Source of the DNA: Octopus sinensis
Taxonomy: Eukaryota
DNA: 64,000 nucleotides
Reading direction: 5' to 3'
Assembly (NCBI RefSeq): GCF_006345805.1
Contig: NC_043026.1
Span: 62,001 to 126,000 of the forward strand
How positions within the stretch are numbered: position 1 is the first letter of the stretch; every line of letters starts with the position of its first letter. Under the pieces are notes generated by a model. The model was given only the letters and a program-made list of their open reading frames with translations. It did not search any database and had not been told where the DNA came from. Positions 27,860-61,508 of this stretch are shown here, piece after piece. The position numbers were made by a program, and so were the translations under genes.

Positions 27860-27916
<57 letters not shown>

Positions 27917-29460: not shown

Positions 29461-29524
<64 letters not shown>

Positions 29525-31302: not shown

Positions 31303-31411
<109 letters not shown>

Positions 31412-31729: not shown

Positions 31730-32330
31730 TGATTGGAAAGTAACTCCCTATTTTAAAATGCTTATAATTTATATATTAACTATAAGTTTTTTCTCAAATT
31801 TGTAGTGTATGTTGTTTAATGTATGGGAATTGATTCCATGTTGTTTTGTTTCAGACTGATTATTTTGTTTGAAATTTAGAAGCCCTACAAACATGGCTGG
31901 ATGCCTTACTGTGCCCAGCTAGCTGCACATTACGAAGTTTAGATATCAGTTGTTCAAGTGCAAAGATGGTGGGGGACCATTAGAGGAAGACATGCTCAAG
32001 TTGATGCAAAGATAATCAAGAAATGCCATGCAAAATTCATGACTACAGGATTTGTAGCTGATACTTGAAGTGGTCGTCCTTCCAATTCATCAAGGTCTGC
32101 ATGACTGGCTGGCCAGAAGCCCTGATTTAACACCCTGTGATTTTGGGTTTTGTTAAAGGAGGAAGTCTTCTCTACCAAACCGATGACTTTGGAAGAACCT
32201 GAAGGGTGAATACGAGACGTTATGTCTTTCATTCCACAAGACTTCCTGATGAAATCAGTTGATGTGGTTCCCAGGTGGTTTGAGAAGCTGGTGGTGAATG
32301 CTTATTCCTATATCAAATTTTAAATAAAAT
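31730..32330 (+). mobile_element. Tc1/mariner remnant
   Basis: Begins tacagg. Near 32100-32300 it reads DWLARSPDLTPCDF..GFVKEEVFSTKPMTLEEL..IRDVMSFIP, the WPxxSPDL motif region of a DDE/DDD transposase. Confidence 0.7.
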
Positions 32331-32723
32331 TCCCTGCTATACACTTTCTTTATATATTCGTTTTTTCTAAAAATTGTAGTTAATAAATAAATTATTAGTA
32401 TTTTAAAATACTAAATTCTTAGGTATAAAAAAGAGGTGGAACCTCTGAACGCAACAACAGTATGAAAGAGATATGGTTTAAAAAGGGAATGTTTGCAGTA
32501 ACTCGACAAAGACTAAGTGAACAAGAAAGACAAAATTGAAATGCTGGTTAACAGCAATAGAAACAATAATATCAGCAACAATATGGTTTCGAAATCTTGG
32601 CCAGCAATTTCGAGGGTAGATGAGTAAGTCGATTTCATCGACCGCTGATGTTCAACTGGTACTTTGATCTGACCGAACAATGTAAAAATAAGTCAACAGT
32701 AATAATAAAGAAGATTCACTTAC

Positions 32724-33053
32724 TTCTATAGAAGGAAATCTCGTTCTCGTTATTCGTGCTGACGACTGTCATTATATTTTCGGTGAGTAATTCTTACAAG
32801 CATGGCTGACTTTGTTGTAAGTGAAATATTGCGATTGGCTCCTCTGAGCGAGCGCGGTGCAGTCGAGTAGGTTTCGTGTTGAGAAGAATTGTTCTGTTGG
32901 AGGTGTCCCAATATAATCATAGGAATAACCAGGCCCCAAACGTTTGTAGTAAGCGTCATCACATTTCTGACCTGAGGTGACAGCCAGGATTGTTGTAAGA
33001 GCTAACAGCAGCACTTCCATTGCAGCAGGACGGGTAAAAGGAAACAGGGACAT
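32724..33053 (-). CDS. Paralogue B, coding exon 1: signal peptide plus PAN/Apple-like module (MSLFPFTRPAAMEVLLLALTTILAVTSG-QKCDDAYY...DCTALAQRSQSQYFTYNKVSHACKNYSPK-[-1 nt]-IMTVVSTNNENEISFYR)
   Basis: ORF 32772-33053 aligns end to end with exon 1 of C. Hydrophobic N-terminus; donor gtaagt at 32723-32718. 330 nt versus 331 in C; the missing base is in the T-run at 32777-32780. Confidence 0.8.
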
Positions 33054-42191: not shown

Positions 42192-42522
42192 ATGTTCCAG
42201 TTTCCTTCTACCATTCCAACCGTGACCACAGTGCTGCTATTAACTCTTACTACAATTCTGACCGTTGCCTCAAATCGGGAAATTTATACAGGCAGCTACA
42301 AATCTTTGGCTCCTGGGTATTCCTACCGTTACCTTCAGGAACCTCCGACAGAACAATTCTCCTCCACTCGATGTCTACTGAAATGTGTCGCAATTTCTCT
42401 AAGCAGCCAATCGGAATTCTTCACTTACAACAATGTCAGCCGTGTTTGTAAGAATTACTCACCGAAATATATCATGACAGTTGTCAGCACGAATGACAGC
42501 AACGAGATGTCCTTCTACAGAA
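42192..42522 (+). CDS. Paralogue C, coding exon 1: signal peptide plus PAN/Apple-like module (MFQFPSTIPTVTTVLLLTLTTILTVAS-NREIY...KCVAISLSSQSEFFTYNNVSRVCKNYSPKYIMTVVSTNDSNEMSFYR)
   Basis: ORF 42192-42530 with a hydrophobic N-terminus. Donor gtcagt at 42523, at the same position as the gtaagt donor of B. 331 nt, phase 1. Confidence 0.82.
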
Positions 42523-42689
42523 GTCAGTGAATTATTATTACTATTATTATTTTTCATTATCATCATGATTAATTCCGCCGAGGTAACTTTCTTTTTCATA
42601 TGAATCGACTCTCTTCTGCGTGTATATAGATCATTTTTTATATGCCATTTTCCTCTGCTTCGATACAGTCCTGACAACAGATCAAACTT

Positions 42690-43200
42690 GTCCCACCCTT
42701 TCTTCTGGACGAGTACAGCCTATTGGTATCACTCTTCGTGTGAAAGGCTCCGTGTACTCTCAACATTTTTCTGGTCATGCTATTCATTTTCTTCATTTAT
42801 CTCTTTTGCCGTTTTATAATTACCGATCCATAACGAAGTGATGCTATTGCCACGTATTAACTGCTTGGATTTTATTGCATTCATTCAATTTTGAGCGAAA
42901 CACATACCCCAGTCTTCGGAAATTCTCCATCTTCTGTTGGTCTTTCATCGCTTTTGCCATTATCTCGTTGAACTCTAGTGCACCAAGGTATTTGCATCCT
43001 TCCGTTTCAATTTGCTTCATCAAGTCTCTGTTCGGTACTTTAATCCCTGTTAGGGAGTGTCCCCTTTTGTCTCTTTTTAAATAGATTATTCCTCATTTCT
43101 TAAGTCCAAATTCCATTCTAATATCAGTATTAAAACAGGGCACCTTGTTCACCAAGGAACATCTTTGCTATCCATTTTTTAATCATTCATGAAGAGAAGG
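42690..43200 (-). mobile_element. Degenerate non-LTR RT C-terminal fragment (R4/Dong-like) in intron 1 of C
   Basis: The minus strand reads DIRMEFGL.K, IETEGCKYLGALE, SKLNECNKIQAVNTW and LRYGS across stops and frameshifts. Confidence 0.65.
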
Positions 43201-43509
43201 TGGCTAATTGTTTGGGAGTTTTCCTTTAGTTAGTACCCTCAGGTATCACGCAGAAAACGAAAAGCACCAGAAATAGGTGGTCTACGGTTACAGGTGTTGA
43301 TAACGTTAATTCTCCTTTTTCCTCATTAATACGAGCTATTATTGTTATAATTATCATTGATAGTAATAATATATTTGTACGTACCTGACGCGTGTGTCAC
43401 ATTTAAGAGAAAGAAATTAAATATTGTAAAACTAAATCTCAGGAAGAGGTTTGAGACCACCACCTATCTGCTTTATTATTATTTATCAACACCCATGCCT
43501 ACTGGACCA

Positions 43510-43900
43510 CAGACGTAACAACGCTCTCAATGAGAAAATTAGGTTACGAGCGTCTTAAATATCCAGCTCGAAATACTGAATGTAGGAAATGGAAGAAGAT
43601 TGATCACTTTTCAAAAGTATGTAGGTCTAAATATTCAGTTACTGCATCAATTCAAACTGATACGGTTGCTTCTGTTCTCTCTGCGTTGCACGCGTCGATG
43701 ATAGAAATATCTATAAATGGATTTTCGTGAAAACTCACTCGGACACTGGAAGATTGGAAAACTTCCTTTCAAAATCTGTGGTTAAATCTCTTCGGCTTCC
43801 TACTTCTCCATATAATGGTACTATATCGATGGCTGCAGCTAATTTAAAGTCGTCTGTCAAAGCATGCTGCAAACTAAATATAACTCGGATCTTTTCGGCG
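43510..43900 (+). mobile_element. Ty3/gypsy LTR-retrotransposon gag zinc-knuckle plus protease remnant
   Basis: ORF 43530-43730 has (C)PARNTECRKWKKIDHFSKVCRS (decayed CCHC knuckle). ORF 43727-43975 has SDTGRLENF (DTG aspartic-protease-like). Confidence 0.6.
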
Positions 43901-45296
43901 TTCACACCATGTAAGAATATCTCCAGAACGGTCATGGGCATTCTTAAATATTTAACTGTTTCTAAACGTTTTTAAGGCAGGGGGCGAGTGTTGTAATTTT
44001 GCTGGATTTGAACCTGTTAGGTGGTGCGTTGTATCACTCTATATAGCAGGTAAACATCTTCATTTATTTGACATTTATCAAGTGGACTACTCGTTTTCTT
44101 TTCTTCTAGTATACTTGTAAGAAAAAGCCAAAGTTCACGGTTCATGGTTAAAACTGACGCTTTCCTACTATATTGGTACAAACATACGTACCTACTTAGT
44201 TACTTACATACCTATTTATACACATACACACTTACTGTTTACTGCAATGATTTGGTTCACTAGATCGGTGAAAAATTCTTTTAAAGTTGTTAATATTTTC
44301 AGAGGGGAAAGCAGCAAACTGGCAGAAACGTTAGCACGCCGGGTGAAATTCTTAGCGGTATTTCGTCTGCCGCTACGTTCTGGGTTCAATTTCCGCCGAG
44401 GTCGCCTTTGCCTTTCATCATTTTGATGTCGATTAAATAAGTACCAGTTACGCACTGGGGTCGATATAATTGACTTAATCCGTTTGTCTTTCCTTGTTTG
44501 TCCTCTCTGTGTTTAGCCCCATGTGGGTAGTATAGAAATAGGTATTTCGTCTGCCGCTACGTTCTGAGTTCAAATTCCGCCTAGGTCGATTTGTCTTTCA
44601 TCATTTTGGGGTCGATTAAATAAGTACCATTTACACACTGGGGTCGATGTAATCGACTTAATCCGTTTGTCTATCCTTGTTTGTCCTCTCTGTATTTAAC
44701 CCCTTATGGGTAGTAAAGAAATAGGTATTTCGCCTGTTGACTCGTTCTGAGTTCAAATTCCGTCCAAGTCGACTTTGCCTTTCATCCACTCGGGGTCGAT
44801 AAATTAAGTACCAGTTCAACACTGGGGTCGATGTAATCGATTCATGGCCTCCCCAAAATTGCTAACCTATGTTCTCCAAAAACTTCTGTTCTGGCTGCAT
44901 CTAAATGATTTTGTAGTCCCTTGTTAAATTATGCTTTATCATGTCCATTTTGTATTTGTTCCTTTAGCTTAATTTTTTTCCTCTGCATTCAATACTCCAT
45001 CATTCCCGACACTAGCAAGGTTTCAATTCGCTCTCCTCGCATACAGACAAACAGTGTCTGTACGTGGATGATGGGCTCCATGCATCTTTAGAAGCTTTCT
45101 CGTTTTCCTGTCCATCTCCTATACCTCCTCCTCTCTTCAGTTCAGGATGCCAACGCCATACCCAGCTCTGAAATGGCGCGAAAGTTCTTTGCCGAAACTA
45201 TGCTACTGGCATCGAGTTTTGAAGCCAATATTGCCATGATTATTACTGCTGCTTCTGCTGCTGCTGCTGCTACTGCTACTACTACTGCTACTACTA

Positions 45297-45338
<42 letters not shown>

Positions 45339-45368
45339 TTGTTGTTGGTATTATTATTATTATTTCAG

Positions 45369-45546
45369 GTAGCCAATGGATTAAAACATATGCCTTATCA
45401 ATGGGAGCTGGTTCGAAAGTCTATGATTCATTCCTGAATATAGGACTTCCTTCAACCTGGAATGTGTACGAATGCAGAGGTGCCTTTTGTCCCAAATTCT
45501 TCCGGCATCCTATCCTGATTTCTGGAACTATCTTCCAATTGAGGAG
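45369..45546 (+). CDS. Paralogue C, coding exon 2 (SQWIKTYALSMGAGSKVYDSFLNIGLPSTWNVYECRGAFCPKFFRHPIL-[-1 nt]-DFWNYLPIEE)
   Basis: Acceptor atttcag, donor gtacgt at 45547. 178 nt versus 179 in B; one G is missing near 45517 (ctg-at-ttc versus ctt-gat-atc in B). Confidence 0.82.
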
Positions 45547-46699
45547 GTACGTATGCATACACATACACGCGCACACAAATGCATATTATTATTTCCATAA
45601 TAACAGTAATAATGATAAACAAATATTTAGATTAATTCAGTTATGTGTGTCACATTTTTGACCTGTAAAAATTATTTATTGGGAAGGCGAAGCAGTGTTG
45701 TGAAGAATTTTATCTGCGGCAAACCGCGGTGAGATTCATGGCCTGCCCCAAATTGTTGCCCTTGTGGAAAAGATTTGAAACCATTGTTATTAATTCGTTT
45801 TATAATAGGTTTTGCTGGAGCTCCTAGAATCTTGCATGCGTAGCAAGCTTGCTGTTTGCAGCCTACGGTGCTATGCTACCCGTCCTTTTCATAGACAAAA
45901 GACTTTCCTTATTGGGAATGACGAGTGAATAAACGACAAAATCGATGAAATCTCCTTAGGATTCATGACTGGTAAAAGTCTTATTCATGCATGTGGACCT
46001 CGGTGGCTCTCGAATTATTTTGTCATTCTTTTTGTGATATGGCAAGATTGAGTTACAAACAAACCTTGAAGGAAGAGCGAAGCCAGAAAACTGTCAGAAC
46101 CCAGATTAAGAGCAGTAAATAAGATTAGCTAGAACACATCTCGTGAAAACCTCTTTCTGATAACACCAGGTAAACCGTCCGATGAATATCCCAAGGGAGA
46201 CAAGCGTGACAAATCAAAATCAACGTGGAAAATTTCTACAGAAACTGAAGAAGTATCAGGCGGTTATACCTGGGGGAAACTATAACTTATTGCCAAATTT
46301 AGAGACAGAATTCTAATGGAACTAAGAAGGCATGTCGTCGGGTGTTTTTCCGCTGTATGTCTAACTACTAAATTCAGCGTTTCAGTGTGTTCTCTCCGGG
46401 CTACACATTTTGGGTGGGAATAAATTTTAGTTGATTAATTCAACAAGCTGTGTTTAGCAGACAATGATATATCAAGCACTAATTAATATAAAAATATTGC
46501 TAGTACATATAATTTTATCTCTTATCTCTTTGTAATAATAATATATTATTAATATATTGGACGCCTTGAAAGATCGTTAGCTCCTACACGCATTTTTTTC
46601 TCTCCTTTTTATTTTCTCCTTTTCTCTCCTTTTTTCTCTCTCCTTGTTTCTCTCCTTGAGAAATAATATATTATTAATATATTATTTAAAAATATATAT

Positions 46700-46760
<61 letters not shown>

Positions 46761-46828
46761 ATGGAAGCGCAATAGCCCAGTGGTTATGAAATATTTCTTT
46801 TATATGTTTATATATGTTTTATATACAT

Positions 46829-46876
<48 letters not shown>

Positions 46877-47619
46877 GTTAAAGATTACAACAAACGTCAA
46901 AGCATCTCAAGTCATATACATTTGACTATCCTCTATATCGGAAATTTACAATAGCTCCATAACTACCGTCTCGGCTACAACCTCGGAGCCCTAGTAATCC
47001 GTTACAGCACTTATCTAGCGTACCTAATCGTTTAGCTCACACGTGAACTAAACCTCCATAATCGTGTGTCTGTATATATACATATATATATGCTATTTAT
47101 ATATCAATATATATTAATCTATCTATATATGCACATATGCATACGCACACATACCCACATGTACATTTTCGAGGATAGGGTAATTAATTTTTGCTCTTAT
47201 ATTTATAAAGTGTTTATATATACTGTTGTGTCTGGGGAGAGTCATTCTCCTCTGATGCCTTAGAATTTAACACACACCGGAAAAATTTCAACATATTTCA
47301 TTATTTTTCTAAAATTTCGTTGCGTCTTGCAACCTTTTCAATAGTTTTGTTTATACATACATACATCACGTGATCATGTGGCCGACCAGACCATGAAATG
47401 TTGTTACACATCGCTGGTCCAATGCGTTCGTATTATTTTAGCTTTTGAATGACGCCACCCCGCTGGCTAAGCGAGCAGGCTAACAGAAAAGAGAGTGGGA
47501 GAAAGAGTGGTGAAAGAGTACAGCCTCGTGGAACATTTTAAGGTGTTTTCGCTCAATAATATATATATATGTATATATATATATACATATACGTACACAA
47601 ACACACGCACGCACACACA

Positions 47620-47660
<41 letters not shown>

Positions 47661-47987
47661 GCACATACAAACATATGTACATGTTGAAGCAAAGAGATTT
47701 TTTATTCTGCCGCCCATACATAAATGTCCCAATAGAATTACCAAAGGTTATAACCAAATCATAAAAGGTAAAAGAGAAGGAACTTACTAACGAACTAAGT
47801 TGCCTATGTGACTTTTGAGTACACTATACACTAAAAGGCTGCACGTATATTAATACTACGAACATTCCCTTTTTACAAGAACATCAGCCCTAAAGCATAC
47901 GCATATTTTCCATATGTTTTACCCCCAAATCTCTCGTCGTTTGGCAACACCTCCAGCAAGGTAGACGGAAACTGAAAGAAGCGTGGC

Positions 47988-48061
<74 letters not shown>

Positions 48062-48270
48062 TTTATTTAAAGCAGCAGAAAATTTAACAAAACCTGTTAC
48101 TCTGAGTTTCCCATTGCCGTTCACCGGCCAGTTCGGCAACGGGGAAACTCAGAGTTACAGGTTTTGTTGAATTTTCTGCTGCTTTAAATAAAGCATATTA
48201 CTCTACCACTGGTATTTGAGTACTCTTTTTTCCACCTTGTTTCACATTTATGTGTGCACTCCGGTGTATA

Positions 48271-48310
<40 letters not shown>

Positions 48311-48606
48311 TTAACTGTAACTTAAACCTTTCACGTAATGTTGATCACTCATTCTAATTGCTCAACATTGGATCCAATATGTGTATACACACACACACGC
48401 ACAGACACACACGCACAGACACACACACACAGATATTGTCATAATTATTATTATTGTTTCCTTACATGCAAAGAAATGATGGAGTAAATATGGAGTGGAC
48501 ATTAGGGTAAGAATGACCAATAAAACAGCCGTTAAATTAGTTTGATCAATTTAACTTGATCCATTTATGTGTGTTTGTCTGTTATATATTTACTCTTACT
48601 TTTCAG

Positions 48607-48770
48607 GTGAAACTGGTGATTTATAAAAACCAAACACCTGTTGTGACTATGATTTTTGATGGACGAAATTCAACCCTTAAAAGCTGGTTTTCTTATGTAA
48701 ACTTGAAAAGTTCTCCATGGGATGACCTATCTTCAGCCAACCCAGAGTATTTCAGGATGGAAGGAATAAA
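48607..48770 (+). CDS. Paralogue C, coding exon 3 (VKLVIYKNQTPVVTMIFDGRNSTLKSWFSYVNLKSSPWDDLSSANPEYFRMEGI)
   Basis: Acceptor ttttcag, donor gtaagt at 48771. 164 nt, phase 0 to 2. Confidence 0.85.
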
Positions 48771-48845
48771 GTAAGTTCTAAATATACTTTTCTTTTTCTC
48801 TTTGTAGAAACGTAATATACCAAAAGCACTTTACGCACGCTACTA

Positions 48846-48906
<61 letters not shown>

Positions 48907-50112
48907 GTTTCTTAACACTATATATTGATTCACGATATTTTCTTGCGCCGAGGTCTACTTTGCCTTTCATCCTTTCAGGGTCAATAGATTATGTACCAGT
49001 TACGCACTGGGGTCGATGCAATCGACTTAATCTATTTGTCTGTCCTTGTTTGTCTCCTCTGTGCATAGCCCCTTGTGGGTAGTAAATAAATAGATATTTT
49101 CTTGAAGCGACCAAAGCATTTCCAGGCTTTCACTATAATATCTTCATTGAATATGATATACAGAGTACAAATTTGAACTACATCTGGTTCCCTCACTAAT
49201 AATGAAATATAATATATCCAAACTGTCGGCTGATTTGTGAACCCTGCTGAATTCTTAATTATAATTGTCCTGTATCATTAGAGACTAAATTTGATTTGGT
49301 ATGCGGTTGCTGGTGGGTACTTACTGCTGATGACATTCAAAGTAGTAGAGATACATATTTAGCAATTCCATCGCAGCTGCTAGATGCTATTTGTCTATTA
49401 CTGGGGCATTTCTGTAATTTTTAACACTGCACCTCTATATGAGATGCTTTCTGGATACTAATAACGAAGTTTTCCGATTTCAACAGTGTATCCACATTAA
49501 GCGACCTGTTTTAAAGTGGGGAAACACGAAAATATACATTCACCTTAAAATGTATGCTATAACTAGTTTTACTTGCGCGTGTTCGTTTTTAAATATTCTT
49601 TATTCCATTATATTATTTCTCTTAATTACCAGAATCCATTGCAAGCTTAGTTTCCTAATTTGTTTAACAAGGGAAAATGTTATGGTTGTTATATTTGTGG
49701 CGCTTTTTCTTACAAATTTTAACTGAAGTCTACTTCGTGTGTAATTTATTATTTCTTTGCGTAATTGTACGAGTGTATTTCTGTGTGAGTGTGTGTGTGT
49801 CTGCGTGAATGCGTTCGTGCGTGTGTGTGCGTGCGTATGCGTGTGTTCACGCACCTATGGTGTAAGATAGATCCCGTTGTGAATTTACTTTCTGCCTAAT
49901 CAAAGAAATCTATTGACGGCTGTTGGAGCCGTCACTACTGATTTTAACAGACTGGTATAGATGTCTTTGTATCGTACCTGACGTGTATATACACTCTCGA
50001 CAGTCCAGTTACTGCAATATTTGTCCTGAGATAGCATTTGTTTTCTCTCATTGTCCACTCAGGGAAAATACTACAGCAACTAGCCTATCGACTGTGTGTA
50101 CATCCTTTCAAT

Positions 50113-50440
50113 GTGAGGGCGCGTGGCTTAGTGGTTAGGGCATTCGGCTCATGATCGTAAGGTTGTGAGTTCGATTCCCGGCGACGCGTTGTGTCCTTGA
50201 GCAAGACACTTTATTTCACGTTGCTCCAGTCCACTCAGCTGGCAGAAATGAGTTGTACTTGTATTTCAAAGGGTCAGCCTTGTCACTCTCTGTGTCACGC
50301 TGATTATCCCCGAGAACTACGTTAAGGGTACACGTGTCTGTGGAATGCTCAGCCATTTGCACGTTAATTTCACGAGCAAGCTGTTCCGTTGATCGTATCA
50401 GCTGGGACCCTCGTCTTCGTAACCGGCAGAGTCTTTTTAG
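50113..50440 (+). mobile_element. Same tRNA-derived SINE in intron 3 of C
   Basis: TSD atcctttcaat at 50102-50112 and 50441-50451. Near-identical to 3957-4284. Confidence 0.85.
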
Positions 50441-50579
50441 ATCCTTTCAATATGATACACAAATGGCTATTTTAAATAAATACTGGTTCAAATGTGTACA
50501 TCGAACATAATGGTATATTTAATAAATGTTTATATTTTCTCATTCTGAAACCCAAACGATTTTCTCTCCAACTTTATAG

Positions 50580-50743
50580 CGGTGTACGTCGCTTCTATAT
50601 AACGAACCACAACGGTGGCTGTTCTGTTGAGAGTGGCTGGCTAGCCCTAAACGAAGCTGGAGTATACTGTGCATATGATGAAATGAATCACTTCCCTGCA
50701 ATTCGTTATTCTGATGCAAAATCGAGAACTATCTGGAACAACG
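50580..50743 (+). CDS. Paralogue C, coding exon 4 (GVRRFYITNHNGGCSVESGWLALNEAGVYCAYDEMNHFPAIRYSDAKSRTIWNN)
   Basis: Acceptor ctttatag, donor gtaagt, 164 nt. Two nucleotide differences from A exon 4. Confidence 0.85.
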
Positions 50744-51243
50744 GTAAGTGATGCTTCCATTTTATGTCTTTCTGTGTCTCTGTCTCCCCCTCTCTCTCTC
50801 TCTCTTTCTCCCTATCTATATGTCTGTCAATCTCCCTGTCTAGCTATCTGTCTATCTATCTATACACGATCCCTATTGATCGGCCCCATTTTCCTTTTTT
50901 TTTCACGATCCCTTTTGATCGGAATTAGACACTTCTTTTTTCTCTCCTTCTCTTGTTCCCCAAAAGAGAAGCACTACTTTATATTTTGCCCCTTCTGTGT
51001 CTAGCCCCTGCGTGGCCAATAAATAAATCGATTCTCAATGTGAGTAGTAATTGCAGCCAATCAGCCTGATCCAACTGATTTATGATCAAAGGTGTTCTGA
51101 CCATGACCCACCTGGATATTTCCAATTACACTATGTGTAGACTTGGCTGCAATTTCTAGTAATTCGAGTGACCACCTTTAAAGCCCTCCCACGATATATT
51201 TGAATGTCTTTTTGTGTTGTATGTGTTTATTTGTTACTTGCAG

Positions 51244-51299
51244 GTTATGCATTAGCAGACTCCATGGCCATATTCATCCGCCTGAGGCAGCAGAACTAA
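51244..51299 (+). CDS. Paralogue C, terminal coding exon 5 (GYALADSMAIFIRLRQQN*)
   Basis: Acceptor tacttgcag, TAA at 51297-51299. Confidence 0.8.
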
Positions 51300-51752
51300 C
51301 CCAGCACATGATATCCATTGATACTATTGTTGTTGTCGTTGTTAACACCCATCCAATCCAGCTGACCACCACTAGTGATCCGCATAGGTCAAGTAATACC
51401 TGTTAATAAAGAATCCATAAAAAATATTGGTGATCTTTCGTTTTGAGTCGACAATTTATAAGCAGGCTTCTTCGGTAATTTCTGTGAACACGTGATCTCT
51501 TGTCAACTGCGTGCTTCTTCTGTCTGACGTGTCGAAGTGGAAGGGGAAGCTAATGGACCTACGTCTGTGTGTGTGTGCATGCTTCTTTTTGTGTGTGTGT
51601 GAGTGCTTGTTCTGTTTTTATGTATTTATGGGTGTGGAATGTAGATATAAAAGCCTTGCGTATTTCTTCTCACCTGCTTCATGTGCGTAAGTAAAATCTG
51701 TAAATTTGCAAAAAGAAAACGAGATCGACGCCGAAAAAGCCATCTCAGTTAT

Positions 51753-51803
<51 letters not shown>

Positions 51804-52752
51804 ACGTGAACAAGCACGCGCGCACAAGAACAAACTCACACAATCATACACTCATTAGCTTCTTCTTCCTCTTCGACACGTCAATCAGAAAAAACACGCA
51901 GTTGGCAAGACAACACGTGCTCACGGAAACTAACGAATATTTTGTTTTCATTCGTCTACTCAAAACGAAGCTATGCCAAACTATTCCATCCAACATCGGT
52001 CTTTTGAGTTGTAATTCTCTTTCTCTCTCTCCAGGGACAGAACTGTTTTTGTTATTGTTCCAGGTCACATCTGACCATAAATATGCATGTGTGTGTTGTG
52101 TGTGTGGTGTGTTTGGTGTGTGTGTGTTGTGTGTGTTGTTGTGTGCGTGTGTGTGTGAACTTCTTTATTTGTATTAAAGCTACCAATGGTTTCAGGTCAT
52201 GAAAGATCGTTGTATCTTAACAATTTTTCAAGGCCATCACATGAAGGAACAGTTATCGCCTCCATTTTGTGTTATAAACATAAACGGAGAAAAAAACCAT
52301 GTGATCGGCTGGAAAAATTGTTAAGATAGGAGTGGCTGTGAGAGACGTACCTTGCTTACCAGCGACATGGTTCCGGGTTCAATACCACTGCGTGGCGCCT
52401 TCGGCAAGTGCATTCTACTGTAGCCTCAGGCCAAACAAAGTCTTCTAAGTGGATTTGCTAGACGGAAAGTGAAAGAAGCCCGTCGTATATATATTGAGTG
52501 TGTGTCTGTGTGTCTGTGTTTGTCCCCCCAACATCGCTTGACAACCGATGCTGGTGTGTTTACGCCCCGGCAACTTGGCGGTTTAAAGTACTAGGCTTAC
52601 AAAGAATAAGTACTGCGGCAGTTTTGCTCGACTAAAGGAGCTGCCACAGCATGGCCGCGTTCAAATGACTGAAACATAAGAGTAGAAGAATAAAAGAATA
52701 TTTTCTAAACATGAATAAAATGGTAGCATTAATGCTTCAATAATATGATTAA

Positions 52753-52885
<133 letters not shown>

Positions 52886-52886
52886 T

Positions 52887-52918
<32 letters not shown>

Positions 52919-55900
52919 CAACAGACTTCTTTCAGTTTCCGCCAACCAAACCTACTCACAAGGCTTTGGTCGGCCAGACTCGAAGATATTTGCGAAAGTT
53001 GCCCCGAAATGGGACTGAACATGGAACCAAGTGGTTGGTAAGCAAATAAGTAACTTTGTAATTACAAGAGTAAAAATTATCAAATAATTATTTAGTAGTT
53101 GTGAGCATGCGAATTTACAGTCAGAAGACATAAATACTTTTAAATATAATAGTATATGAAATATACGCGGAGTGATAAGTATCATGTGGATTTCTTACAT
53201 GCTAAAAATAGCAGTCAAAGTCTAAAACCACGAAAGAATATTCTTACATTAAAGCACGTTGATTTGTAATCAAGTAAACACTTTGAGTGAATAAAAATAT
53301 AGTAAACCTTATACTCAAGGGTTTCACTATTAAAGACAAAATAATCATTTAATGAATAATTTATTGATTAATTAATTTCTATAGCTCGTCGGAAAGGTCG
53401 CTAATTAAATGCATAAACATAAAACTGCAATACATATCGAAAACACAAATTAAACAGATGCGCACTCTGGTCCATGTTTATGCATCATTGATTCATCTCA
53501 GAATGCACGCAAACAATGTGCAACATATACATATATATATATATATACATGTATATAATATTTGTGACTTGGAACCAGTGAAAGGATAATTAACTATAGC
53601 ATTTAACACCAATCAAAGCCAAACAGTGTTAAACAATGTGTGTGTATGCCTTTTGTTTGTAATTAAAAAGTGCACTGATAATTTCTGTGATACATGTAGA
53701 AACACGCAGGAGAAGTTGGTGAAAACTGTTCTTGTTACAATGTTTCGAAATCGATAACCAAGTCACGTGGAAATGTTGATAGAGGCAAGAGTGCTTACGT
53801 GATTAATTGATGTTAAATGAAGAGGTATCTTTTGAGATGGCAACTAGGAAGGATTTAAATCGATTGTGTACGAATGCCGAACTATGAGAAAATCCACATT
53901 GACGAATGCCTTTCTACATGTAAGTCTTAGTCTAAGCGGAGAAGGAACACACACGAGGACGGAAAGTCTTTCCTGTAGATGTCACACGTGTATGATGAAG
54001 ATTAATGGATAATGGCCATGAGTTAGAATAAGAACAGTAGTAAACGAGTGAAGAGCGAAGATATGGTGCGTGTGTTTATTTGGCAATAAACAAGAACAAC
54101 GACAGTAATTTTATTCAGCTGAATACACGTTATTGATTGGTTGAAGTTACCGAAATACGACAACTTTAACGTGAAATAACTTCGTAAATATAAGTTTTTC
54201 TCCAAAATGCTGAGAGTAAAATATGTTTTATATGACACATTCTATCAGTGTCCGAAGTTTCAAAGTGTTTAGTTGCGAAAAAATTATTTTCTAAATCTGT
54301 AGGTCAAAAGGTAAAGATCCTATAACGAGATAATAAATAACGTCCTCGCAAATCGTTGTACTCAAGACACACAATACTTGTACTTACACTCGACAATACG
54401 CAACTCTCGGCTTTACACAGCTCACCGACTCTCCTTTTCTTTATTTGGCACCCAGGCCTTAACAGAGAGAGGACAACAAAAGGACAGACAGAACACAACA
54501 AATGGGGACAAAAAATATGCAGCGAACGCAAAATGAAAAAATGTATAATGAAATCGATCCTGATGAAATGGCTGCATGAGCCCAACTCTGATTCTTTATT
54601 TAGGCACTCGGCAACTAACACGGAGGGGACACTACAAGGACAGACACAACACCACAGTGGGGACAATAAACATAAAACGAATGAGCATGACTATTATATA
54701 ATAATGAAAGATGAATGGTTGCAGGAGCCCCACTCACAAGCAGTACCATTTAACTGTTAATTTAGACAATTTTTTAGTTTTCTTTTTTCTTTTTGCATTT
54801 TCTTTCCCATTTAAAAAAAATCTATTTCCTTCATTTTTTCTTTCTTATTTTTTTCTTCTCTTTTTCCCTTTTTAAAGGACTCCTCTATTACCATTCATTA
54901 GGGGTATTAATTCCTCGTATTTATCTTCTTTGGGTAGTTGCTCAAATTAAATTTCTTTCCCCAAAGGGTTCACATAGTCCTTTCAACCTTTTATACCTTT
55001 CCTTGTCAATCGCCACACCCTTGATGTTTCCAGCTAACGTTCAGCTGGCAATCCTATTCTTATGGCACCTTTCAAATTCCTTATTTTTTCGCTCTATGTC
55101 GGTGCTTTTCACATATATATTACTACAATCCACTTTTTCTTATTAGTAATTACTTGGTTACGCTCCGGACATGGCGGTCCTGGCTATTCGTTCCCTTCGT
55201 TCCTCCGTCTGTACATAACCATAACCGTCCACGATTATATTTTCCAATCTATGTAGCGATACTTCTGCTGGGGTATCGGCCAGTTCATCGGTACCTCCTC
55301 TATTTACTCAATTTTGCACCGTTGACACGACTGGAGCGGCATCACGTGATGTAGAAACTATGTTAGCATGAATACCTTTGGCAGGCTGAACCATTTTTGT
55401 GCACGTGCTCGAGAATATCACGATGCCAAATATTCTCCATTTTCAAATATAATATTCAGTTCTAGGAAAACCAGTTTCCTTTAAGGGGATCGAAAACATC
55501 CCATTTTCCACCGGTTCTTCAGTTAAATACCCCATATGATAGAGAAAGATTTATCAAAACTAAAAAGGGTAATATATTCAATTTGAAGCACTCCGTCGGT
55601 TACGACAACGAGGGTTCCGGTTGATCCGAATAAACGGAACAGCCTGCTCGTGAAATTAACGTGTAAGTGGCTGAGCACTCCACAGACACGTGTACCCTTA
55701 ACGTAGTTCTCGGGGATATTTAGCGTGACACAGAGAGTGACAAGGCCGGCCCTTTGAAATACAGGTACAACAGAAGCAGGTAGTAAGAGAGAGAGAAAGT
55801 TGTGGTGAAAGAGTACAGCAGGGATCACCACCATCCCTGCCGGAGCATCGGATGGAAGCACTCCGTCTTTACGACGACGAGGGTTCCGGTTGATCCGAAT

Positions 55901-56473
55901 CAACGGAACAGCCTGCTCGTGAAATTAACGTGTAAGTGGCTGAGCACTCCACAGACACGTGTACCCTTAACGTAGTTCTCGGGGATATTCAGCGTGACAC
56001 AGAGAGTGACAAGGCCGCCGGCCTTTGAAATACAGGTACAACAGAAGCAGGTAGTAAGAGAGAGAGAGAAAGTTGTGGTGAAAGAGTACAGCAGGGATCA
56101 CCACCATCCCCTGCCGGAGCCTCGTGGAGCTTAGGTGTTTTCCGCTCAATAAACACTCCAACGCCCGGTCTGGGAATCGAAAACCGCCGATCCTATGACC
56201 GCGAGTCCGCTGCCCTAACCACTGGGCCATTGCGCCTCCACATATATTCAATATAGATAATTAAAAGGATAGAGAGAATTACAATTTCATGTTTTAATCT
56301 TAATTTATTAACATTATAATATACATATACTATAGGCGCAGGAGTGGCTGTGTGGTAAGTAGCTTACTACCACCAACCACATGGTTCCGGGTTCAGTCCC
56401 ACTGCTTGGCACCTGGGGCCGACCGAAGCTTTGTGAGTGGATTTGGTAAATGGAAACTAAAAGAAGCCCGTCG

Positions 56474-56510
<37 letters not shown>

Positions 56511-58205
56511 TTGTGTTTGTCTCCCCAACATCGCTTGACAACCGATGCTGGTGTGTTTCCGTCCCCGATACATAGCGGTTCGGCGAAAGAGACCGATAGA
56601 ATAAGTACTCGGCTTACAAAGAATAAGTCCCGTGTCGATTTGCTCGAGTAATGGGCGGTTTTCCATTAGACAAATTATTAACATTAGTTATCTCCCTTGC
56701 ATCCTGTTGAAGCTCAAGTTTCGAACTGTACTGCTTTTATGTAAATAATTTTTGCTGTTAACATGGTCCGATTTGAATTTTTTCTTCTACGGAAGGAAGA
56801 GCAAGCCTTCTTCTGTCATACTCTCAATTTTGGTCAACCCCACTGCGTAACTGTACTTAATTTATCGACCCCGAAAGGATGAAAGGCAAAGTCGAACTCG
56901 GTGGAATTTGAACTCAGAACGTATCGGCAGACAAATACGGCTACGCACTTCGGCCGGCGTGCTAACGTTTCTGCCAGCTCGCCGCCTTTACTGGCTTTAA
57001 TATACTTAACGTTATCCCTTTAACTTGCTTACGAATGGCGGAATATAAAACGAACAGGTTCATCACCAGTTTCAGACTGCAGTTTAAGACGGGGTGTACA
57101 CCTTTTTAAGTGTGCGTGTCTCTGATGTATATTCATGTATTTTCTTTTATTTGCATATGTTTATACTGTTTTCACTCATCCTTTTTCACTGTGTCTGTGT
57201 GTTCGTTCTGTTTCCCTCTCTTTTTCTTTCTATCCTTATTATTCCTCTTTCCTTCTACTCTTTCTATTCTTGCCTCCTTTTCTACTTCTATAACCAAGTC
57301 ATCAACACCTCACACCACTACCACTCCTCCTAAACTTACTCAATCTCTCTATATAAACGCGGCAGTTTGTCTGTGTGTGTTTCTGTGTGTCTGTTACGTT
57401 GTACCCTCACCCTGACCACGGCTTTCAACCGATTCTGATGAAACTTGACACACACATAGCCCAATGTCATAATTCAAAACTAACGCAGCGAAAATTTTGA
57501 AAAGTTCCCCCAGTTCTGAAAAAAATCGATAAATTCGACATGGAGTCGAGAATCAGAAACACAAACCACAGACTGTCTAGGGACGCAACTCGACCTTTTT
57601 AACTAAAAAAATTTACCATCATTTTTTTTTCCATTTTTTTGGCTTTAACTCTCTAAAAATGCCTTATAGTTATTCCCTTACAAACCCGAGCAACGCCGGG
57701 CGATACTGCTAGTACTTATTATATGTGAGCTGGCAGAAACGTTAGCACGCCGGGCGAAATGCTTCACACGTATTTCGTCTGCCGCTACGTTTCTGAGTTC
57801 AAATTCCGCCGAGGTCGACTTTGCCTTTCATCCTTTCGGGGTCGATAAATGAAAGTACCAGTTTACGCACTGGTTTCGATGTAATCGACTTAATACCTAT
57901 GTCTGTCTTTGTTTGTCCCCTCTGTGTTTAGCCCCTTGGTGGGCAATAAAGAAATAGGAAATAGATATTTCGTCTCGCCGCTACGTTTCTAAGTTCAAAT
58001 TCCGCCGAGGTCGGCGTTGCCTTTCATACCTTCGTGGTCGATAAATTAGTACCAGTTACGCCTGGATCCATGTAATCGACTTAATCCCTTTGTCTGTCCT
58101 TGTTTTTGCCCTTTGTGTTTAGCCCCTTGTGGCTAATAAATAAAAATAATATTATATGTTTCTATCATTAACTCGGCTCTTTTCCTCTATATTCCCTCTC
58201 TTTCT

Positions 58206-58241
<36 letters not shown>

Positions 58242-58765
58242 CTTCCCATACTCTGTCTTTTTCTCTTTTCCTTTCATTCCTTCTTGATTTATCGGTTTAC
58301 ATTTCGTTCCAAGTTGTTAATAGAAACACCAGAAGCCTGTCACTGGGTGTCTGTGTTTGTTTGGCCCCTTGCAGGGCTATATTCGGCCCCACAAACAATG
58401 GGCGTTTTAATCACATACAACTAAGCAAGATGGCGGAGAGCATCTTGAAAGAGTTAAAAGAATACTGGCTCTCTCGCAGGTGACTGCTGAAGATTTCCCT
58501 CCCCTACACGTATATAAACAAATAATTTATGTGCATCACTTTGAAGAATTTACTCGAACAAATCGACCGAAGACTTATTCTATGAAGTTCATTCTATCGG
58601 AATGTCGAGTCTCTAAGTTACGGGGACGGAGACACACCAACAATAGTTGTGAAGCAAACGCCACAACACACAAACAAACCAAAAGGAACACGCTCGCACA
58701 CATATCACACACACATACACACACAAACACGTTCGTCCTCACACACATACCCACAGACATACACA

Positions 58766-58796
<31 letters not shown>

Positions 58797-59756
58797 TATA
58801 CATTGTTTTGTTAAAACCGAAAAACCTTCAGAAAACTCTGACCCAGGCTTTCACGTGACCGTTCATTAGACAGTTAGGATAGCTCGGACTAATTAAATTC
58901 TGTGAGTACATATATATCACAATGCGAGATCTGATCAAAAAGTATCGGGACTGCTGCTATAAAGAGGAAACTACAACACATAGGAATTCAGGATTTCATC
59001 TCCTTCGAAGTATTTCTCTTCTGAAGCAACACAATTTATGAAGCATCGTTTCAATCGTCAGGAACATCCCTGGAACTCATTTCTGAGGATAGCGAGCATC
59101 TACCTCGTCGCATTCTCTAGGATTTTCTCGACATCTTCAAATCTTTTGGGCCTTCCACTACGAAGACCTTGGTTCCGGTGTCATAGCAACAGGCACAAGG
59201 TCTTCACCTGTAATGACGTTTTTCAAATGACTTCCTAGACACAACCAAATAGATTCTGCACCGCTGACAGCCTTTCTTCTTGGGACAACCACACTCAAGA
59301 CACTTTACTTCTAAACACTGCTATCAACAACGGAAGTTAGTGGAAACTTTATAACCACCGTGAATGATCGCCATATTTCATTCTGTAACTGCCACCTCTG
59401 AAGTGTGCAGTGTTACATAATAGATCGGACTCTTACCTAACATTCCATTGAACCCATAGTGACAAAACGATGGGTTAGATCGTCTCTAATATATGTATAA
59501 AACTGTACGTATTATATATATATATATACATTTAATATATTATGTATATTATATATGTATGGATATTAATTAATAAGGGTGAGAGAATTAGATACTAATT
59601 TAATAGTATATCTATTCAACACCAAGTGGCCTAGTGCTCCGAGAAACCTGGATTATTATAATATTTTAATATATTATAATATTTTTACAAAATAAATATA
59701 AGAGAGTGGTCACTATAGGCTCACTCTCTTATATTTATTTTGTATGGATATTATAT

Positions 59757-59810
<54 letters not shown>

Positions 59811-60388
59811 AATATACATAATATATATACAACTTATAAACAAGGGCAAAAGAAATAATTATCATGCCAAATATGCGGAAAATAGACAAATCGTGTTCAC
59901 TTCACTTCCGGACTCTCTCACTCTATGAGAGTTTTCAGTCCGATCGCACGTGTCTCGAGGTGTGCTGGAGAATTTCTATTTTGGATATATTTGTGGTACT
60001 TAAGTATGCTCATGACTTAATGTTTGCTTCTTCCATGGGTATAAGTAAGTATTTCATTTATTTCTTACGGTATTTATCGCTGACGAGGAAAAAATTGTTA
60101 TGAATTAACTCTGAAATTGGGACCGATATGATATTAACGGAATTTTTTAGAAATTTCTGTCGTCTTACTTCGAGACACGTGCTTATAGTAATAGCTTATA
60201 TGGTTAGTGACGATGTGTCTATTTTCGGCATATTTCGCATTAGAATTTTTTCTTTTCCCTTGTTTATAAGTTGTTTATAAATTTAAACTTTAAAGTTATT
60301 TTTCAATATGCTGGCCATTGAGAGAATTTTTTTTGAAAATTCTATCCTATATTAGATGTAAATATATATATGTATATATGTATATATA

Positions 60389-61107: not shown

Positions 61108-61175
61108 TCATGGGCCGGGATATTCCTGCTGCCTGAGGCTGATGAATATGGCCATGGAGTCTGCTATTCCATAAC
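61108..61175 (-). CDS. Paralogue D, terminal coding exon 5 (GYGIADSMAIFISLRQQEYPGP*)
   Basis: Acceptor tacttgcag, TGA at 61110-61108. Four residues longer than A/B/C. Confidence 0.78.
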
Positions 61176-61508
61176 CTGCAAGTAACAATAACAACATCAA
61201 TAACCAAAGGAATTGAAATAAATCGTGGAAAGTCCTCCTACGCGCTCGCTCATATTAATAGAAATGGCAGCCAAATCTCCACAAAGTGTAATGGGAAACA
61301 TACAGGTGGGTCACGGTCAGAACGCTTTAGATCATAAATTAGTTGAATCAAGGCTGATTGGCTGCTGTACAATAAGTACAAAAATAACTTCTGCAATTAC
61401 TACTCACATTAAGAGAGAGAGAGAGAGAGTGAGCGAGTGAGAGACAGAGAGAGAATGGGGAAAGCGACACAGAGAAAGTCACAAGCACAAAATGAAAACA
61501 TCACTTAC

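What the first reader, a model, noticed from the sequence alone, without database searches (positions are those of the whole stretch)
42192..51299. Hidden five-exon gene for an unnamed secreted protein, present as four paralogues (A+, B-, C+, D-)
The ORF track shows only disconnected pieces. Joining them by splice sites gives a phase-consistent gene (331/179/164/164/56 nt; phases 1,0,2,1; 894 nt = 297 aa plus stop once one base is restored). The protein has a signal peptide, a PAN/Apple-like module and a ~185-aa C-terminal domain with Trp/aromatic motifs and two cysteine pairs. Exon sizes and splice sites are conserved in all copies, including the diverged D, which argues for a real gene. From memory, a similar C-terminal domain occurs in uncharacterised mollusc and other invertebrate proteins, but I know no name or function for it. 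A locally amplified, secreted, variable two-domain protein could be a lectin-like or pathogen/prey-recognition family, or a gland-secreted effector; that is inference.
Basis: partly seen in the sequence, partly recalled or inferred. Interest (0 to 1): 0.82.

Follow-up and report, generated by a model that had tools for sequence, protein, structure and literature searches.

The report
Octopus Apple plus fibrinogen-like secreted gene family
The five-exon gene is real, but this copy is broken by one missing base; it belongs to an amplified Octopus sinensis family, already in RefSeq as "uncharacterized protein", that joins a PAN/Apple module to an unnamed invertebrate domain which is most likely a very diverged fibrinogen-related (lectin-type) domain.

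Summary
Exons 42192-42522, 45369-45546, 48607-48770, 50580-50743 and 51244-51299 have canonical AG/GT sites, phases 1,0,2,1, and junction codons that match intact relatives. The window is Octopus sinensis GCA_006345805.1.

Copy C, the finding, has a 1-nt frameshift in exon 2. RefSeq therefore splits it: exon 1 goes to a 243-kb model (LOC118768578) and exons 3-5 to a 113-aa model. Copy B has lost exon 3 and has a frameshift in exon 1. Copy D has a 161-nt exon 4.

The N-terminal domain is PAN/Apple by fold (AlphaFold2 pLDDT 87.5; Foldseek probability about 1.0 to the HGF N domain) and by Pfam hits in orthologues. The C-terminal 185 aa has no Pfam or PDB sequence match, yet it defines a large family (983 clusters at 50% identity) in molluscs, nemerteans, echinoderms, hemichordates, amphioxus and Myxococcota.

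Some relatives carry a canonical fibrinogen A-subdomain running straight into this domain at "GGGWT". Foldseek's only hits for the domain are weak matches to fibrinogen-related domains (FReDs). Variation among octopus paralogues is concentrated in loops around a conserved disulfide. The best reading is a secreted, lectin-like binding protein; no function has been tested. The gene is not hidden or new, but the domain assignment is.

The parts
42192..42522 (+). Copy C exon 1 (331 nt): start codon, hydrophobic signal-like segment, PAN/Apple module; ends in phase 1
   Evidence: ATG, GT donor. Translation is identical over 110 aa to the N-terminus of RefSeq LOC118768578 isoform X1, P0173.
45369..45546 (+). 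Copy C exon 2 (178 nt; 179 in relatives): start of the FReD-like domain (SQWIKTYA... CxxxFC ... HPILDFW)
   Evidence: AG acceptor and GT donor present.
45505..45525 (+). Site of the 1-nt deletion relative to paralogues (frameshift), inside the most conserved motif of the family
   Evidence: Alignment with B exon 2. The two reading frames change over here. Intact copies exist (P0214, P0166, P0173).
48607..48770 (+). Copy C exon 3 (164 nt)
   Evidence: E 1.6e-19. Its internal Met at 48649 is the start of a separate 113-aa RefSeq model.
50580..50743 (+). Copy C exon 4 (164 nt): hypervariable loops around the Cys239-Cys255 pair
   Evidence: E 1.1e-17; highest entropy among 20 paralogues.
51244..51299 (+). 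Copy C exon 5 (56 nt) with stop codon
   Evidence: The 17 aa are identical in A, B and C.
51405..51410 (+). AATAAA polyadenylation signal 106 nt after the stop. Copy A has one at 5245, 100 nt after its stop.
2651..5145 (+). Copy A exons 3-5 (2651-2814, 4424-4587, 5090-5145) = RefSeq LOC118768575. Exons 1-2 lie upstream of the window.
   Evidence: The 127 aa are identical to P0001/P0214.
19572..33053 (-). Copy B, degenerate: exon 1 33053-32724 (330 nt, frameshift), exon 2 27855-27677 (179 nt), exon 3 absent, exon 4 20300-20137, exon 5 19627-19572. A retroelement lies in the long intron.
61108..62410 (-). Copy D exons 3-5 (62410-62247, 61669-61509 = 161 nt, 61175-61108), open frame ending ...QQEYPGP*. 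Exons 1-2 lie beyond the window end.
48434..60319 (+). Arm of a recent segmental duplication (92-98% identical to 2479-13873; inverted copy at 21495-13861) that carries the 3' halves of A, B and C

Best explanation
Window 42192-51299 is copy C of a tandem and inverted cluster, on a 15.1-Mb Octopus sinensis contig, of a lineage-expanded five-exon gene family.

Shown:
- Each intact member encodes a protein of about 297 aa. It has an N-terminal hydrophobic signal-like segment, then a cysteine-poor PAN/Apple module (exon 1), then a domain of about 185 aa (exons 2-5).
- Copy C as assembled has one frameshift in exon 2. It is therefore either a young pseudogene or an assembly indel error.
- Copy A (LOC118768575) is the intact neighbour, and copy B is a decayed copy.

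Inferred, fairly well supported:
- The 185-aa domain is a very diverged fibrinogen-related domain (FReD), consisting of the B and P subdomains without the A subdomain.

Inferred by analogy only:
- The protein is secreted and N-glycosylated and acts as a soluble binding, lectin-like recognition protein.
- PAN supplies a protein or carbohydrate docking module.
- The loops around the conserved Cys239-Cys255 pair, which correspond to the ligand-binding P subdomain of ficolins, FREPs and tachylectin-5, form a binding site that has diversified among paralogues.
For: Gene:
- Splice sites are canonical and phases fit.
- Profile hits per exon are E 1e-10 to 5e-20.
- RefSeq has intact members of 293-297 aa, including XP_036371235.1 for copy A.
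- The RefSeq model coordinates map exactly onto 42192 and 48649-51299.

PAN:
- AF2 model of the intact paralogue P0166 has pLDDT 87.5 and pTM 0.82.
- Foldseek hits the HGF NK1 N domain at probability 0.97-1.0, rmsd about 3 A over 85-90 residues.
- PAN_1 scores 28.1 and 29.5 bits in Mytilus and Gigantopelta orthologues.

FReD link:
- Animal proteins P0104 and P0155 have the order signal peptide, PAN, EGF, then "VYCDQ..GGGWT". Myxococcota proteins P0059/66/67/80 also carry that segment.
- In the Myxococcota proteins P0059, P0067 and P0080, Pfam Fibrinogen_C positions 2-61 match that segment (E 6e-16 to 6e-20). My own FReD profile matches it in both the Myxococcota and the animal proteins (E 5e-7 to 2e-4).
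- The match overlaps and runs directly into the family domain, which scores E 1e-33 to 5e-50.
- hhalign gives 91.9% probability for that part.
- Every Foldseek hit that covers the C-terminal domain is an FReD or an intelectin: FGL1 probability 0.75, and TM up to 0.40 per target.
- PAN plus canonical FReD architectures exist in snails, limpets and a coral (PMC7588048; P0339).

Extracellular role:
- The domain co-occurs with TSP1, F5/8C, C-type lectin, Sushi, EGF, VWD, ZP and SUEL domains.

Diversification:
- Entropy among 20 octopus paralogues peaks at residues 212-228, 232-243 and 247-262. It is lowest at 146-170.
Against: - No Pfam Fibrinogen_C hit at E<=10 in any octopus or mollusc member.
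- No PDB sequence hit with the family profile.
- hhalign of the A-less family profile against an FReD profile is not significant. The significant part of the bridged alignment stops after the "GGWT" strand.
- Foldseek scores for the C-terminal domain are weak (E 0.02-0.2). I could not search with the domain alone.
- The FReD signature "WW..C..sNLNG" is absent.
- No expression data, ligand or literature was found for any member.
- dN/dS among the window copies is 0.5 to above 1, with strongly mosaic dS. This fits relaxed constraint plus gene conversion as well as it fits diversifying selection.
- Copy C itself may make no protein.
Confidence: 0.6

Rival explanations
1. Copy C is an intact, expressed gene, and the single-base frameshift in exon 2 is a long-read assembly indel error rather than a biological lesion.
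For: - Everything else about C is intact: eight canonical splice sites, no stop codon in either reading segment, and a poly(A) signal.
- The lesion is a single missing base in a short run.
- B's exon 1 lesion is also a 1-nt deletion.
- A near-identical but in-frame B-type exon 1 exists on an unplaced scaffold (P0013).
- From my own knowledge, this assembly was built from PacBio continuous long reads, which are prone to indel errors.
Against: - A and C are recent duplicates, about 97% identical including introns. A young pseudogene would look just as intact.
- The cluster clearly does produce dead copies, since B lacks exon 3.
- RefSeq did not model C as one read-through gene. It split it into two models.
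Confidence: 0.4
2. The C-terminal domain is an independent, so far undescribed fold. Only the short N-terminal module seen in some relatives ("C..G.Y.idP...VyCDm..GGGWT") is shared with fibrinogen-related and fibrillar-collagen C-propeptide domains.
For: - Profile-profile significance is confined to that module.
- The same segment also hits Pfam COLFI.
- There are no sequence hits to any solved structure.
- Foldseek TM is at most 0.40.
Against: - In true FReDs the "GGWT" strand is part of the central B-sheet, not a separable module.
- The family profile starts exactly there, with matching order and length.
- All structural neighbours of the domain are FReDs or intelectins.
- A greedy extension of the alignment is colinear to the last strand and places the family Cys pair on the FReD "NCA..GWW..C" disulfide, though with no statistical confidence.
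Confidence: 0.2
3. The family is a structural or adhesive extracellular component, for example of mucus, egg coat or matrix, rather than a recognition lectin.
For: In other phyla the domain sits in matrix-type mosaics: VWD+ZP, TSP1 arrays, an ADAMTS-like protein, a SVEP1-like protein and an adhesion GPCR.
Against: - The octopus proteins are small two-domain proteins with no polymerising modules.
- Variation concentrates in a few loops rather than being spread evenly.
Confidence: 0.25
4. The family is a gland-secreted effector, for example salivary and directed at prey.
For: Only generic features support this: the protein is secreted, small, amplified and variable.
Against: - The same 297-aa architecture is conserved in filter-feeding bivalves, grazing gastropods and a nemertean.
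- There is no similarity to any toxin family in Pfam or PDB.
- There are no tissue data.
Confidence: 0.07

Closest known systems
Fibrinogen-related domain (FReD) recognition proteins: ficolins, tachylectin-5A, snail FREPs, FGL1, angiopoietins
   Same: - Secreted proteins with a C-terminal globular domain of about 190-220 aa.
- Relatives of the octopus domain keep the canonical FReD N-terminal segment up to "GGGWT".
- A conserved Cys pair flanks a "GW" motif in the distal half.
- The best structural neighbours are FReDs.
- The family has expanded in a mollusc, with variable distal loops.
   Different: - No Pfam or PROSITE FReD match in octopus members.
- The A subdomain is missing.
- No "WW..C..NLNG" motif.
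- No recognisable calcium-site "D.D.D" motif by eye.
- There is an extra CxxxFC pair.
- Ligand binding is untested.
PAN/Apple plus FReD mosaics of molluscs and cnidarians (Biomphalaria FREP1 with PAN/Apple, some Lottia FReDs, Oculina P0339)
   Same: An N-terminal PAN/Apple module is combined with a fibrinogen-type globe in one secreted protein (PMC7588048).
   Different: Those proteins carry canonical FBG domains recognised by Pfam, often with IgSF or coiled-coil spacers. Here the globe is the diverged, A-less form, and the PAN module has lost most of its cysteines.
PAN/Apple modules of HGF/plasminogen N domains, prekallikrein/factor XI and apicomplexan AMA1/MIC proteins
   Same: The fold of residues about 30-110 is the same (Foldseek probability 0.97-1.0). 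The helix-to-hairpin cysteine pair is retained.
   Different: The octopus module has only 2-3 cysteines and scores below the Pfam threshold (12.2 bits against 21.4).
Intelectins and fibrillar collagen C-propeptide (COLFI)
   Same: Both are diverged relatives or partial look-alikes of FReDs. Intelectins appear among the Foldseek hits, and COLFI matches the A-like segment of the bacterial members.
   Different: Neither has detectable sequence similarity to the octopus domain itself.

Membership tests
Unnamed PAN + 185-aa-domain family (octopus LOC118768575-type; Crassostrea LOC105339732-type) | Significant profile match over the whole C-terminal domain | tested here: met
   Exon-wise E-values are 1e-10 to 5e-20 in the window. 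Copy A is identical to P0214. There are 983 clusters at E<=1e-3.
Unnamed PAN + 185-aa-domain family (octopus LOC118768575-type; Crassostrea LOC105339732-type) | Length of about 297 aa, with signal segment, PAN, then the domain | tested here: met
   The conceptual product of C is 297 positions with X at the frameshift. Orthologues are 296-298 aa in Octopus, Crassostrea, Mytilus, Gigantopelta, Potamilus and Lineus.
Unnamed PAN + 185-aa-domain family (octopus LOC118768575-type; Crassostrea LOC105339732-type) | Uninterrupted reading frame | tested here: not met
   Copy C has a 1-nt frameshift in exon 2. Copy B has a frameshift and lacks exon 3. For copy A only exons 3-5 lie in the window: they read through without interruption and are identical to the 297-aa RefSeq product. 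Its exons 1-2 lie outside the window and were not read here.
Fibrinogen-related domain (Pfam PF00147 Fibrinogen_C) | Pfam model match at or above the gathering score | tested here: not met
   No hit even at E<=10 for window pieces or octopus and mollusc members. Only Myxococcota relatives match, and only over model positions 2-61.
Fibrinogen-related domain (Pfam PF00147 Fibrinogen_C) | A subdomain ("C..G.Y.I.P...VYCDM..GGGWT") contiguous with the globe | tested here: not met
   Absent in octopus, where PAN is followed directly by "QWIKTYA". Present in relatives P0104, P0155, P0115 and P0059/66/67/80.
Fibrinogen-related domain (Pfam PF00147 Fibrinogen_C) | FReD fold of the B and P subdomains | tested here: inconclusive
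   For the C-terminal half, the Foldseek hits of the whole-protein model are almost only FReDs or intelectins. Scores are E 0.02-0.2, probability at most 0.75 and TM at most 0.40. No domain-only search was possible.
Fibrinogen-related domain (Pfam PF00147 Fibrinogen_C) | Signature "W-W-x-x-C-x2-[GSA]-x2-N-G" and the P-domain disulfide | tested here: inconclusive
   The signature is absent (the family has "GC..D.GWL.V....C.WE"). A greedy hhalign extension puts the family Cys pair on the FReD "NCA..GWW..C" pair, but with zero posterior confidence.
Fibrinogen-related domain (Pfam PF00147 Fibrinogen_C) | Calcium site and ligand (acetyl-group or peptide) pocket | not testable with these tools
   Needs model coordinates or an experiment.
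PAN/Apple (Pfam PF00024 PAN_1) | Pfam match at or above the gathering score (21.4 bits) | tested here: not met
   There is no hit for the exon 1+2 piece of copy C. The octopus paralogue P0166 scores 12.2 bits, E 0.17. Orthologues P0085 (28.1 bits) and P0082 (29.5 bits) do meet it.
PAN/Apple (Pfam PF00024 PAN_1) | PAN fold (a helix packed on a curved sheet) | tested here: met
   Foldseek hits the HGF NK1 N domain at probability 0.97-1.0, rmsd 2.8-4 A over 85-91 columns. It also hits AMA1 and the PAN-bearing Colletotrichum copper oxidase. The model is of paralogue P0166, whose exon-1 product is nearly identical to that of C.
PAN/Apple (Pfam PF00024 PAN_1) | Four to six conserved cysteines | tested here: not met
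   There are only Cys61, Cys65 and Cys86 in C, and two in most paralogues.
Secreted protein | Cleavable N-terminal signal peptide | tested here: inconclusive
   A hydrophobic core at residues 7-26 (Kyte-Doolittle score up to 2.26) is followed by "VAS|N". No SignalP-type predictor was available.

The most novel reading that the evidence does not exclude
The cluster could be a diversified recognition repertoire, an octopus counterpart of snail FREPs. Three mechanisms might generate variety:
- Hypervariable P-like loops.
- Mosaic gene conversion between paralogues.
- Long-range splicing of alternative PAN first exons onto the FReD-like exon sets of distant copies.

The splicing idea rests on two RefSeq observations. 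The 243-kb model starts at exon 1 of copy C, and LOC118768576 isoforms X1 and X2 share exons 2-5 but differ in exon 1. In that reading, a copy with a dead exon 2 still contributes a usable PAN cassette.
Probability: 0.1. Interest if true: 0.8.

Novelty: new variant of a known kind. Interest (0 to 1): 0.45.

Why it matters
- The gene itself is not a discovery. RefSeq already holds it, unnamed.
- What is new is a name and a testable hypothesis for a large uncharacterised extracellular domain family. It has about a thousand clusters at 50% identity across lophotrochozoans, echinoderms, hemichordates, amphioxus and some Myxococcota, and no Pfam model.
- If the domain is a diverged FReD, then FReD-type recognition proteins in invertebrates are undercounted by domain-based surveys.
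- Octopus, for which few humoral recognition families are described, would then have a locally amplified, loop-variable PAN-FReD-like family to test in immunity or other extracellular recognition.
- The locus also shows how one frameshift in a young duplicate makes automatic annotation chain exons across 243 kb.

Tried and rejected
- **Pfam and PDB sequence searches.** The two halves of C gave nothing in Pfam or PDB. The family profile against PDB sequences gave only noise, namely TTK kinase at E about 0.4.
- **First AlphaFold run.** A 9-sequence octopus-only alignment gave pLDDT 49 and was unusable. A 71-sequence alignment fixed this.
- **hhalign against fibrinogen.** The family profile against a single human fibrinogen gamma sequence gave nothing. 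It proved sound: it retrieved fibrinogen gamma chains at up to 97% identity. Against a 71-sequence FReD profile, only the A-like segment of the bridged profile was significant, and the A-less profile was not.
- **Word-indexed search with a diverse alignment.** It returned only octopod proteins, so I took taxonomy from cluster look-ups instead.
- **Context look-ups.** The look-up of P0001 was not on record.
- **dN/dS.** The values of 0.5-3.6 rest on small counts, and dS is mosaic (0.04-0.78). I judged them uninformative about selection.
- **Literature.** Searches by LOC, XP and UniProt identifiers and by domain words found nothing on this family.
- **UniProt automatic names.** "SLH domain-containing" and "Farnesoic acid O-methyl transferase domain-containing" are attached to two octopus members. 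Pfam did not reproduce them, and I disregard them.
- **tRNA.** ARAGORN found no tRNA.

Full report
**1. The observation**

The window is metazoan DNA, rich in microsatellites, with GC about 0.37. They measure 331/178/164/164/56 nt.

Copy B's exon 2 is 179 nt, and copy C lacks one base relative to it. With 179 nt the phases are 1,0,2,1 and the CDS is 894 nt. The codons that span the junctions (FYR|S-SQW, PIEE|VKLV, EGI-N-GVRRF, WNN-G-YALADS) reproduce the sequence of intact relatives.

I did not put a base back. The two reading segments were searched apart, or joined with X.

**2. Copies in the window**

tblastn, blastn and a six-frame scan with the family profile give this inventory:

| Copy | Strand | Exons found | Notes |
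|---|---|---|---|
| A | + | 3-5 (2651-2814, 4424-4587, 5090-5145) | Exons 1-2 lie left of the window |
| B | - | 1 (33053-32724), 2 (27855-27677), 4 (20300-20137), 5 (19627-19572) | Exon 1 is 330 nt, its own frameshift; no exon 3 |
| C | + | all five | 1-nt frameshift in exon 2 |
| D | - | 3-5 (62410-62247, 61669-61509, 61175-61108) | Exon 4 is 161 nt, in frame; stop four codons later |

There are no further copies.

Self-comparison shows that the 3' halves of A, B and C plus about 8 kb downstream are recent segmental duplicates:
- 2479-13873 matches 48434-60319 in direct orientation at 92-98% identity.
- 2890-10760 matches 21495-13861 in inverted orientation at 94-98% identity.
- A and B therefore form a palindrome centred near 12.3 kb.

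B's homology to A ends 76 nt short of where exon 3 should end. That point abuts an (AT)136 run and a GC-rich retroelement block. So B is a decayed hybrid copy.

**3. Source and existing annotation**

The three A exons translate to 127 aa identical to the C-terminal part of RefSeq LOC118768575 of Octopus sinensis. Isoform X1 of that gene (XP_036371235.1, P0214) is 297 aa.

Exon 1 of C is identical over 110 aa to the start of LOC118768578 isoform X1 (P0173). In GCA_006345805.1 that gene model spans 243 kb. Inside it, at offsets 6457-9107 from its first codon, lies a separate 113-aa model. Those offsets equal window 48649-51299, which is C exon 3 from an internal Met, plus exons 4 and 5.

So the pipeline recognised all the exons but could not join them across the frameshift. 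The gene family is thus annotated, without a name, in O. sinensis, O. vulgaris, O. bimaculoides and Argonauta. At least a dozen loci lie on this contig, several of them intact at 293-297 aa.

**4. The N-terminal domain**

AlphaFold2 on the intact paralogue P0166 with a 71-sequence alignment gave pLDDT 87.5 and pTM 0.82. Foldseek against the PDB matches residues about 30-110 to several PAN-bearing structures:
- The PAN/Apple N domain of HGF NK1, at probability 0.97-1.0 and rmsd about 3 A.
- AMA1.
- The PAN-bearing Colletotrichum copper oxidase.

Pfam PAN_1 is above threshold in the Mytilus and Gigantopelta orthologues. In octopus, where only two or three cysteines remain, it is sub-threshold.

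**5. The C-terminal domain**

It has no Pfam match and no match to PDB sequences. A profile of nine octopus sequences nevertheless finds 983 clusters (50% identity level) at E<=1e-3 and 549 at E<=1e-10.

Cluster look-ups place these in the following groups, all labelled "uncharacterized":
- Bivalves and gastropods.
- The nemertean Lineus.
- Crinoids and a starfish.
- Saccoglossus and Branchiostoma.
- Myxococcota.

The 296-298-aa PAN-plus-domain architecture is conserved in molluscs and Lineus. Oyster members occur on intron-free contigs of about 1.2 kb assembled from sequencing runs, which suggests transcription.

In larger proteins the domain is tandemly repeated up to four times. It sits beside TSP1, F5/8C, C-type lectin, Sushi, EGF, VWD, ZP, SUEL, kringle, ADAMTS and adhesion-GPCR modules. 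It is therefore an extracellular module.

**6. Link to fibrinogen-related domains**

Three lines of evidence point to FReDs.

(a) All Foldseek hits that cover the C-terminal half are FReDs or intelectins: fibrinogen fragment D, FGL1, ANGPTL3/6, angiopoietin-2, ficolins and MFAP4. The scores are weak, at E 0.02-0.2, probability at most 0.75 and TM at most 0.40 per target.

(b) Several relatives carry a canonical FReD N-terminal segment that runs into the family domain.
- In Myxococcota proteins P0059, P0067 and P0080, Pfam Fibrinogen_C matches model positions 2-61 (E 6e-16 to 6e-20). The family profile starts inside that match, at "GGGWT", and runs to the end of the domain (E 1e-33 to 1e-44). 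P0066 has the same segment but was not scanned with Pfam; my own FReD profile matches it (E 1e-6 to 3e-6).
- Animal proteins P0104 and P0155 have the order signal peptide, PAN, EGF, "VYCDQ..GGGWT", then the family domain. The overlap between the two profile matches is the same.

(c) hhalign of a bridged profile against an FReD profile gives 91.9% probability for that segment. A greedy extension is colinear to the last strand. It puts the family's "C..D.GW...C" on the FReD "NCA..GWW..C" disulfide, but with no confidence.

The A-less profile alone is not significantly similar to FReDs.

I read this as a very diverged branch of the FReD superfamily. In the octopus-type proteins the A subdomain is absent and a PAN module precedes the globe. 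I put this at about 0.7. The rival, a new fold behind a shared N-terminal module, I put at about 0.2. PAN combined with canonical FReDs is already known in Biomphalaria, Lottia and a coral (PMC7588048).

**7. Variation and selection**

Among 20 full-length octopus paralogues, entropy is lowest in the exon-2 motif "CxxxFCPNFFRHPILDFW..LPI.EVKLV". It is highest at residues 212-228, 232-243 and 247-262, which are the loops around Cys239-Cys255 encoded mainly by exon 4.

Within the window, dN/dS is 0.5 to above 1, but dS itself varies from 0.04 to 0.78 between segments. This points to mosaic gene conversion, so I make no claim about selection.

**8. How it most likely works**

- **Shown:** a five-exon gene family; two-domain products; the PAN fold; an extracellular domain family; one broken and one decayed copy in the window.
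- **Inferred:** FReD-superfamily membership; secretion, from a hydrophobic N-terminus, five sequons and extracellular partner domains.
- **By analogy only:** a soluble lectin-like binder. Its specificity would lie in the variable P-like loops, with PAN acting as a second docking module.

There are no expression, ligand or literature data.

**9. Status of copy C**

It is either a young pseudogene or an assembly indel error. I rate these at roughly 55:45; only reads can decide.

**10. Verdict**

"Hidden" and "novel gene" are overstated, because RefSeq already has the family. The useful new result is the domain assignment and the breadth of the unnamed family. Interest is moderate.

Noticed in passing
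window 2479-13873, 48434-60319 and 13861-21495: A recent segmental duplication of about 11.4 kb (92-98% identity, direct) plus an inverted arm (94-98%). The 3' halves of A and B form a palindrome centred near 12.3 kb. A 134-aa ORF with no Pfam match is carried along in three copies (8065+, 15895-, 54356+).
   Followed up: partly
window 22000-26000, ORF 23355-24542 (-): A GC-rich (0.47-0.53) block with strong purine skew lies inside B's long intron. It holds a 395-aa reverse-transcriptase ORF (RVT_1 28.1 bits, just under the cutoff). This is probably the retroelement insertion associated with loss of B's exon 3.
   Followed up: partly
window 62850-63554 (+): A 234-aa ORF with a GIY-YIG endonuclease domain (27.9 bits) lies in D's intron 2. 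With the RT ORF above, it suggests Penelope-like retroelements.
   Followed up: partly
window 3963-4032 (+): A borderline Rfam tRNA hit (29 bits, at threshold) that ARAGORN does not call. It lies in an insert of about 324 bp in intron 3 that A and C share and B lacks. It is probably a tRNA-derived SINE, and it marks A and C as the youngest duplicates.
   Followed up: partly
window 29790-30687; also 36246-37286 and 21478-21750: A minisatellite of 30 copies of a 30-bp unit (95% matches) in B's intron 1; a simple repeat of about 1 kb with GC skew -0.47 between B and C; and an (AT)136 run.
   Followed up: no
RefSeq models around window 42192; P0213 and P0209: LOC118768578 isoform X1 begins at C's exon 1 but spans 243 kb to reach another copy's exons 2-5. 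LOC118768576 isoforms X1 and X2 share exons 2-5 but have different first exons. This is either exon chaining by the annotation pipeline among near-identical paralogues or real long-range alternative splicing.
   Followed up: partly
proteins P0059, P0066, P0067, P0080 (Myxococcota MAG and environmental contigs): Large bacterial surface-type proteins (TIG, FG-GAP, MopE and CarboxypepD_reg domains) end in two or three tandem copies of a complete FReD-like domain of this family. This raises a possible inter-kingdom transfer.
   Followed up: partly
protein P0013 (O. sinensis unplaced 26-kb scaffold) versus window 32724-33053: A B-type copy with an in-frame exon 1 and an exon 3 exists on an unplaced scaffold. 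It may be an alternative haplotype or a further paralogue of the decayed copy B.
   Followed up: no
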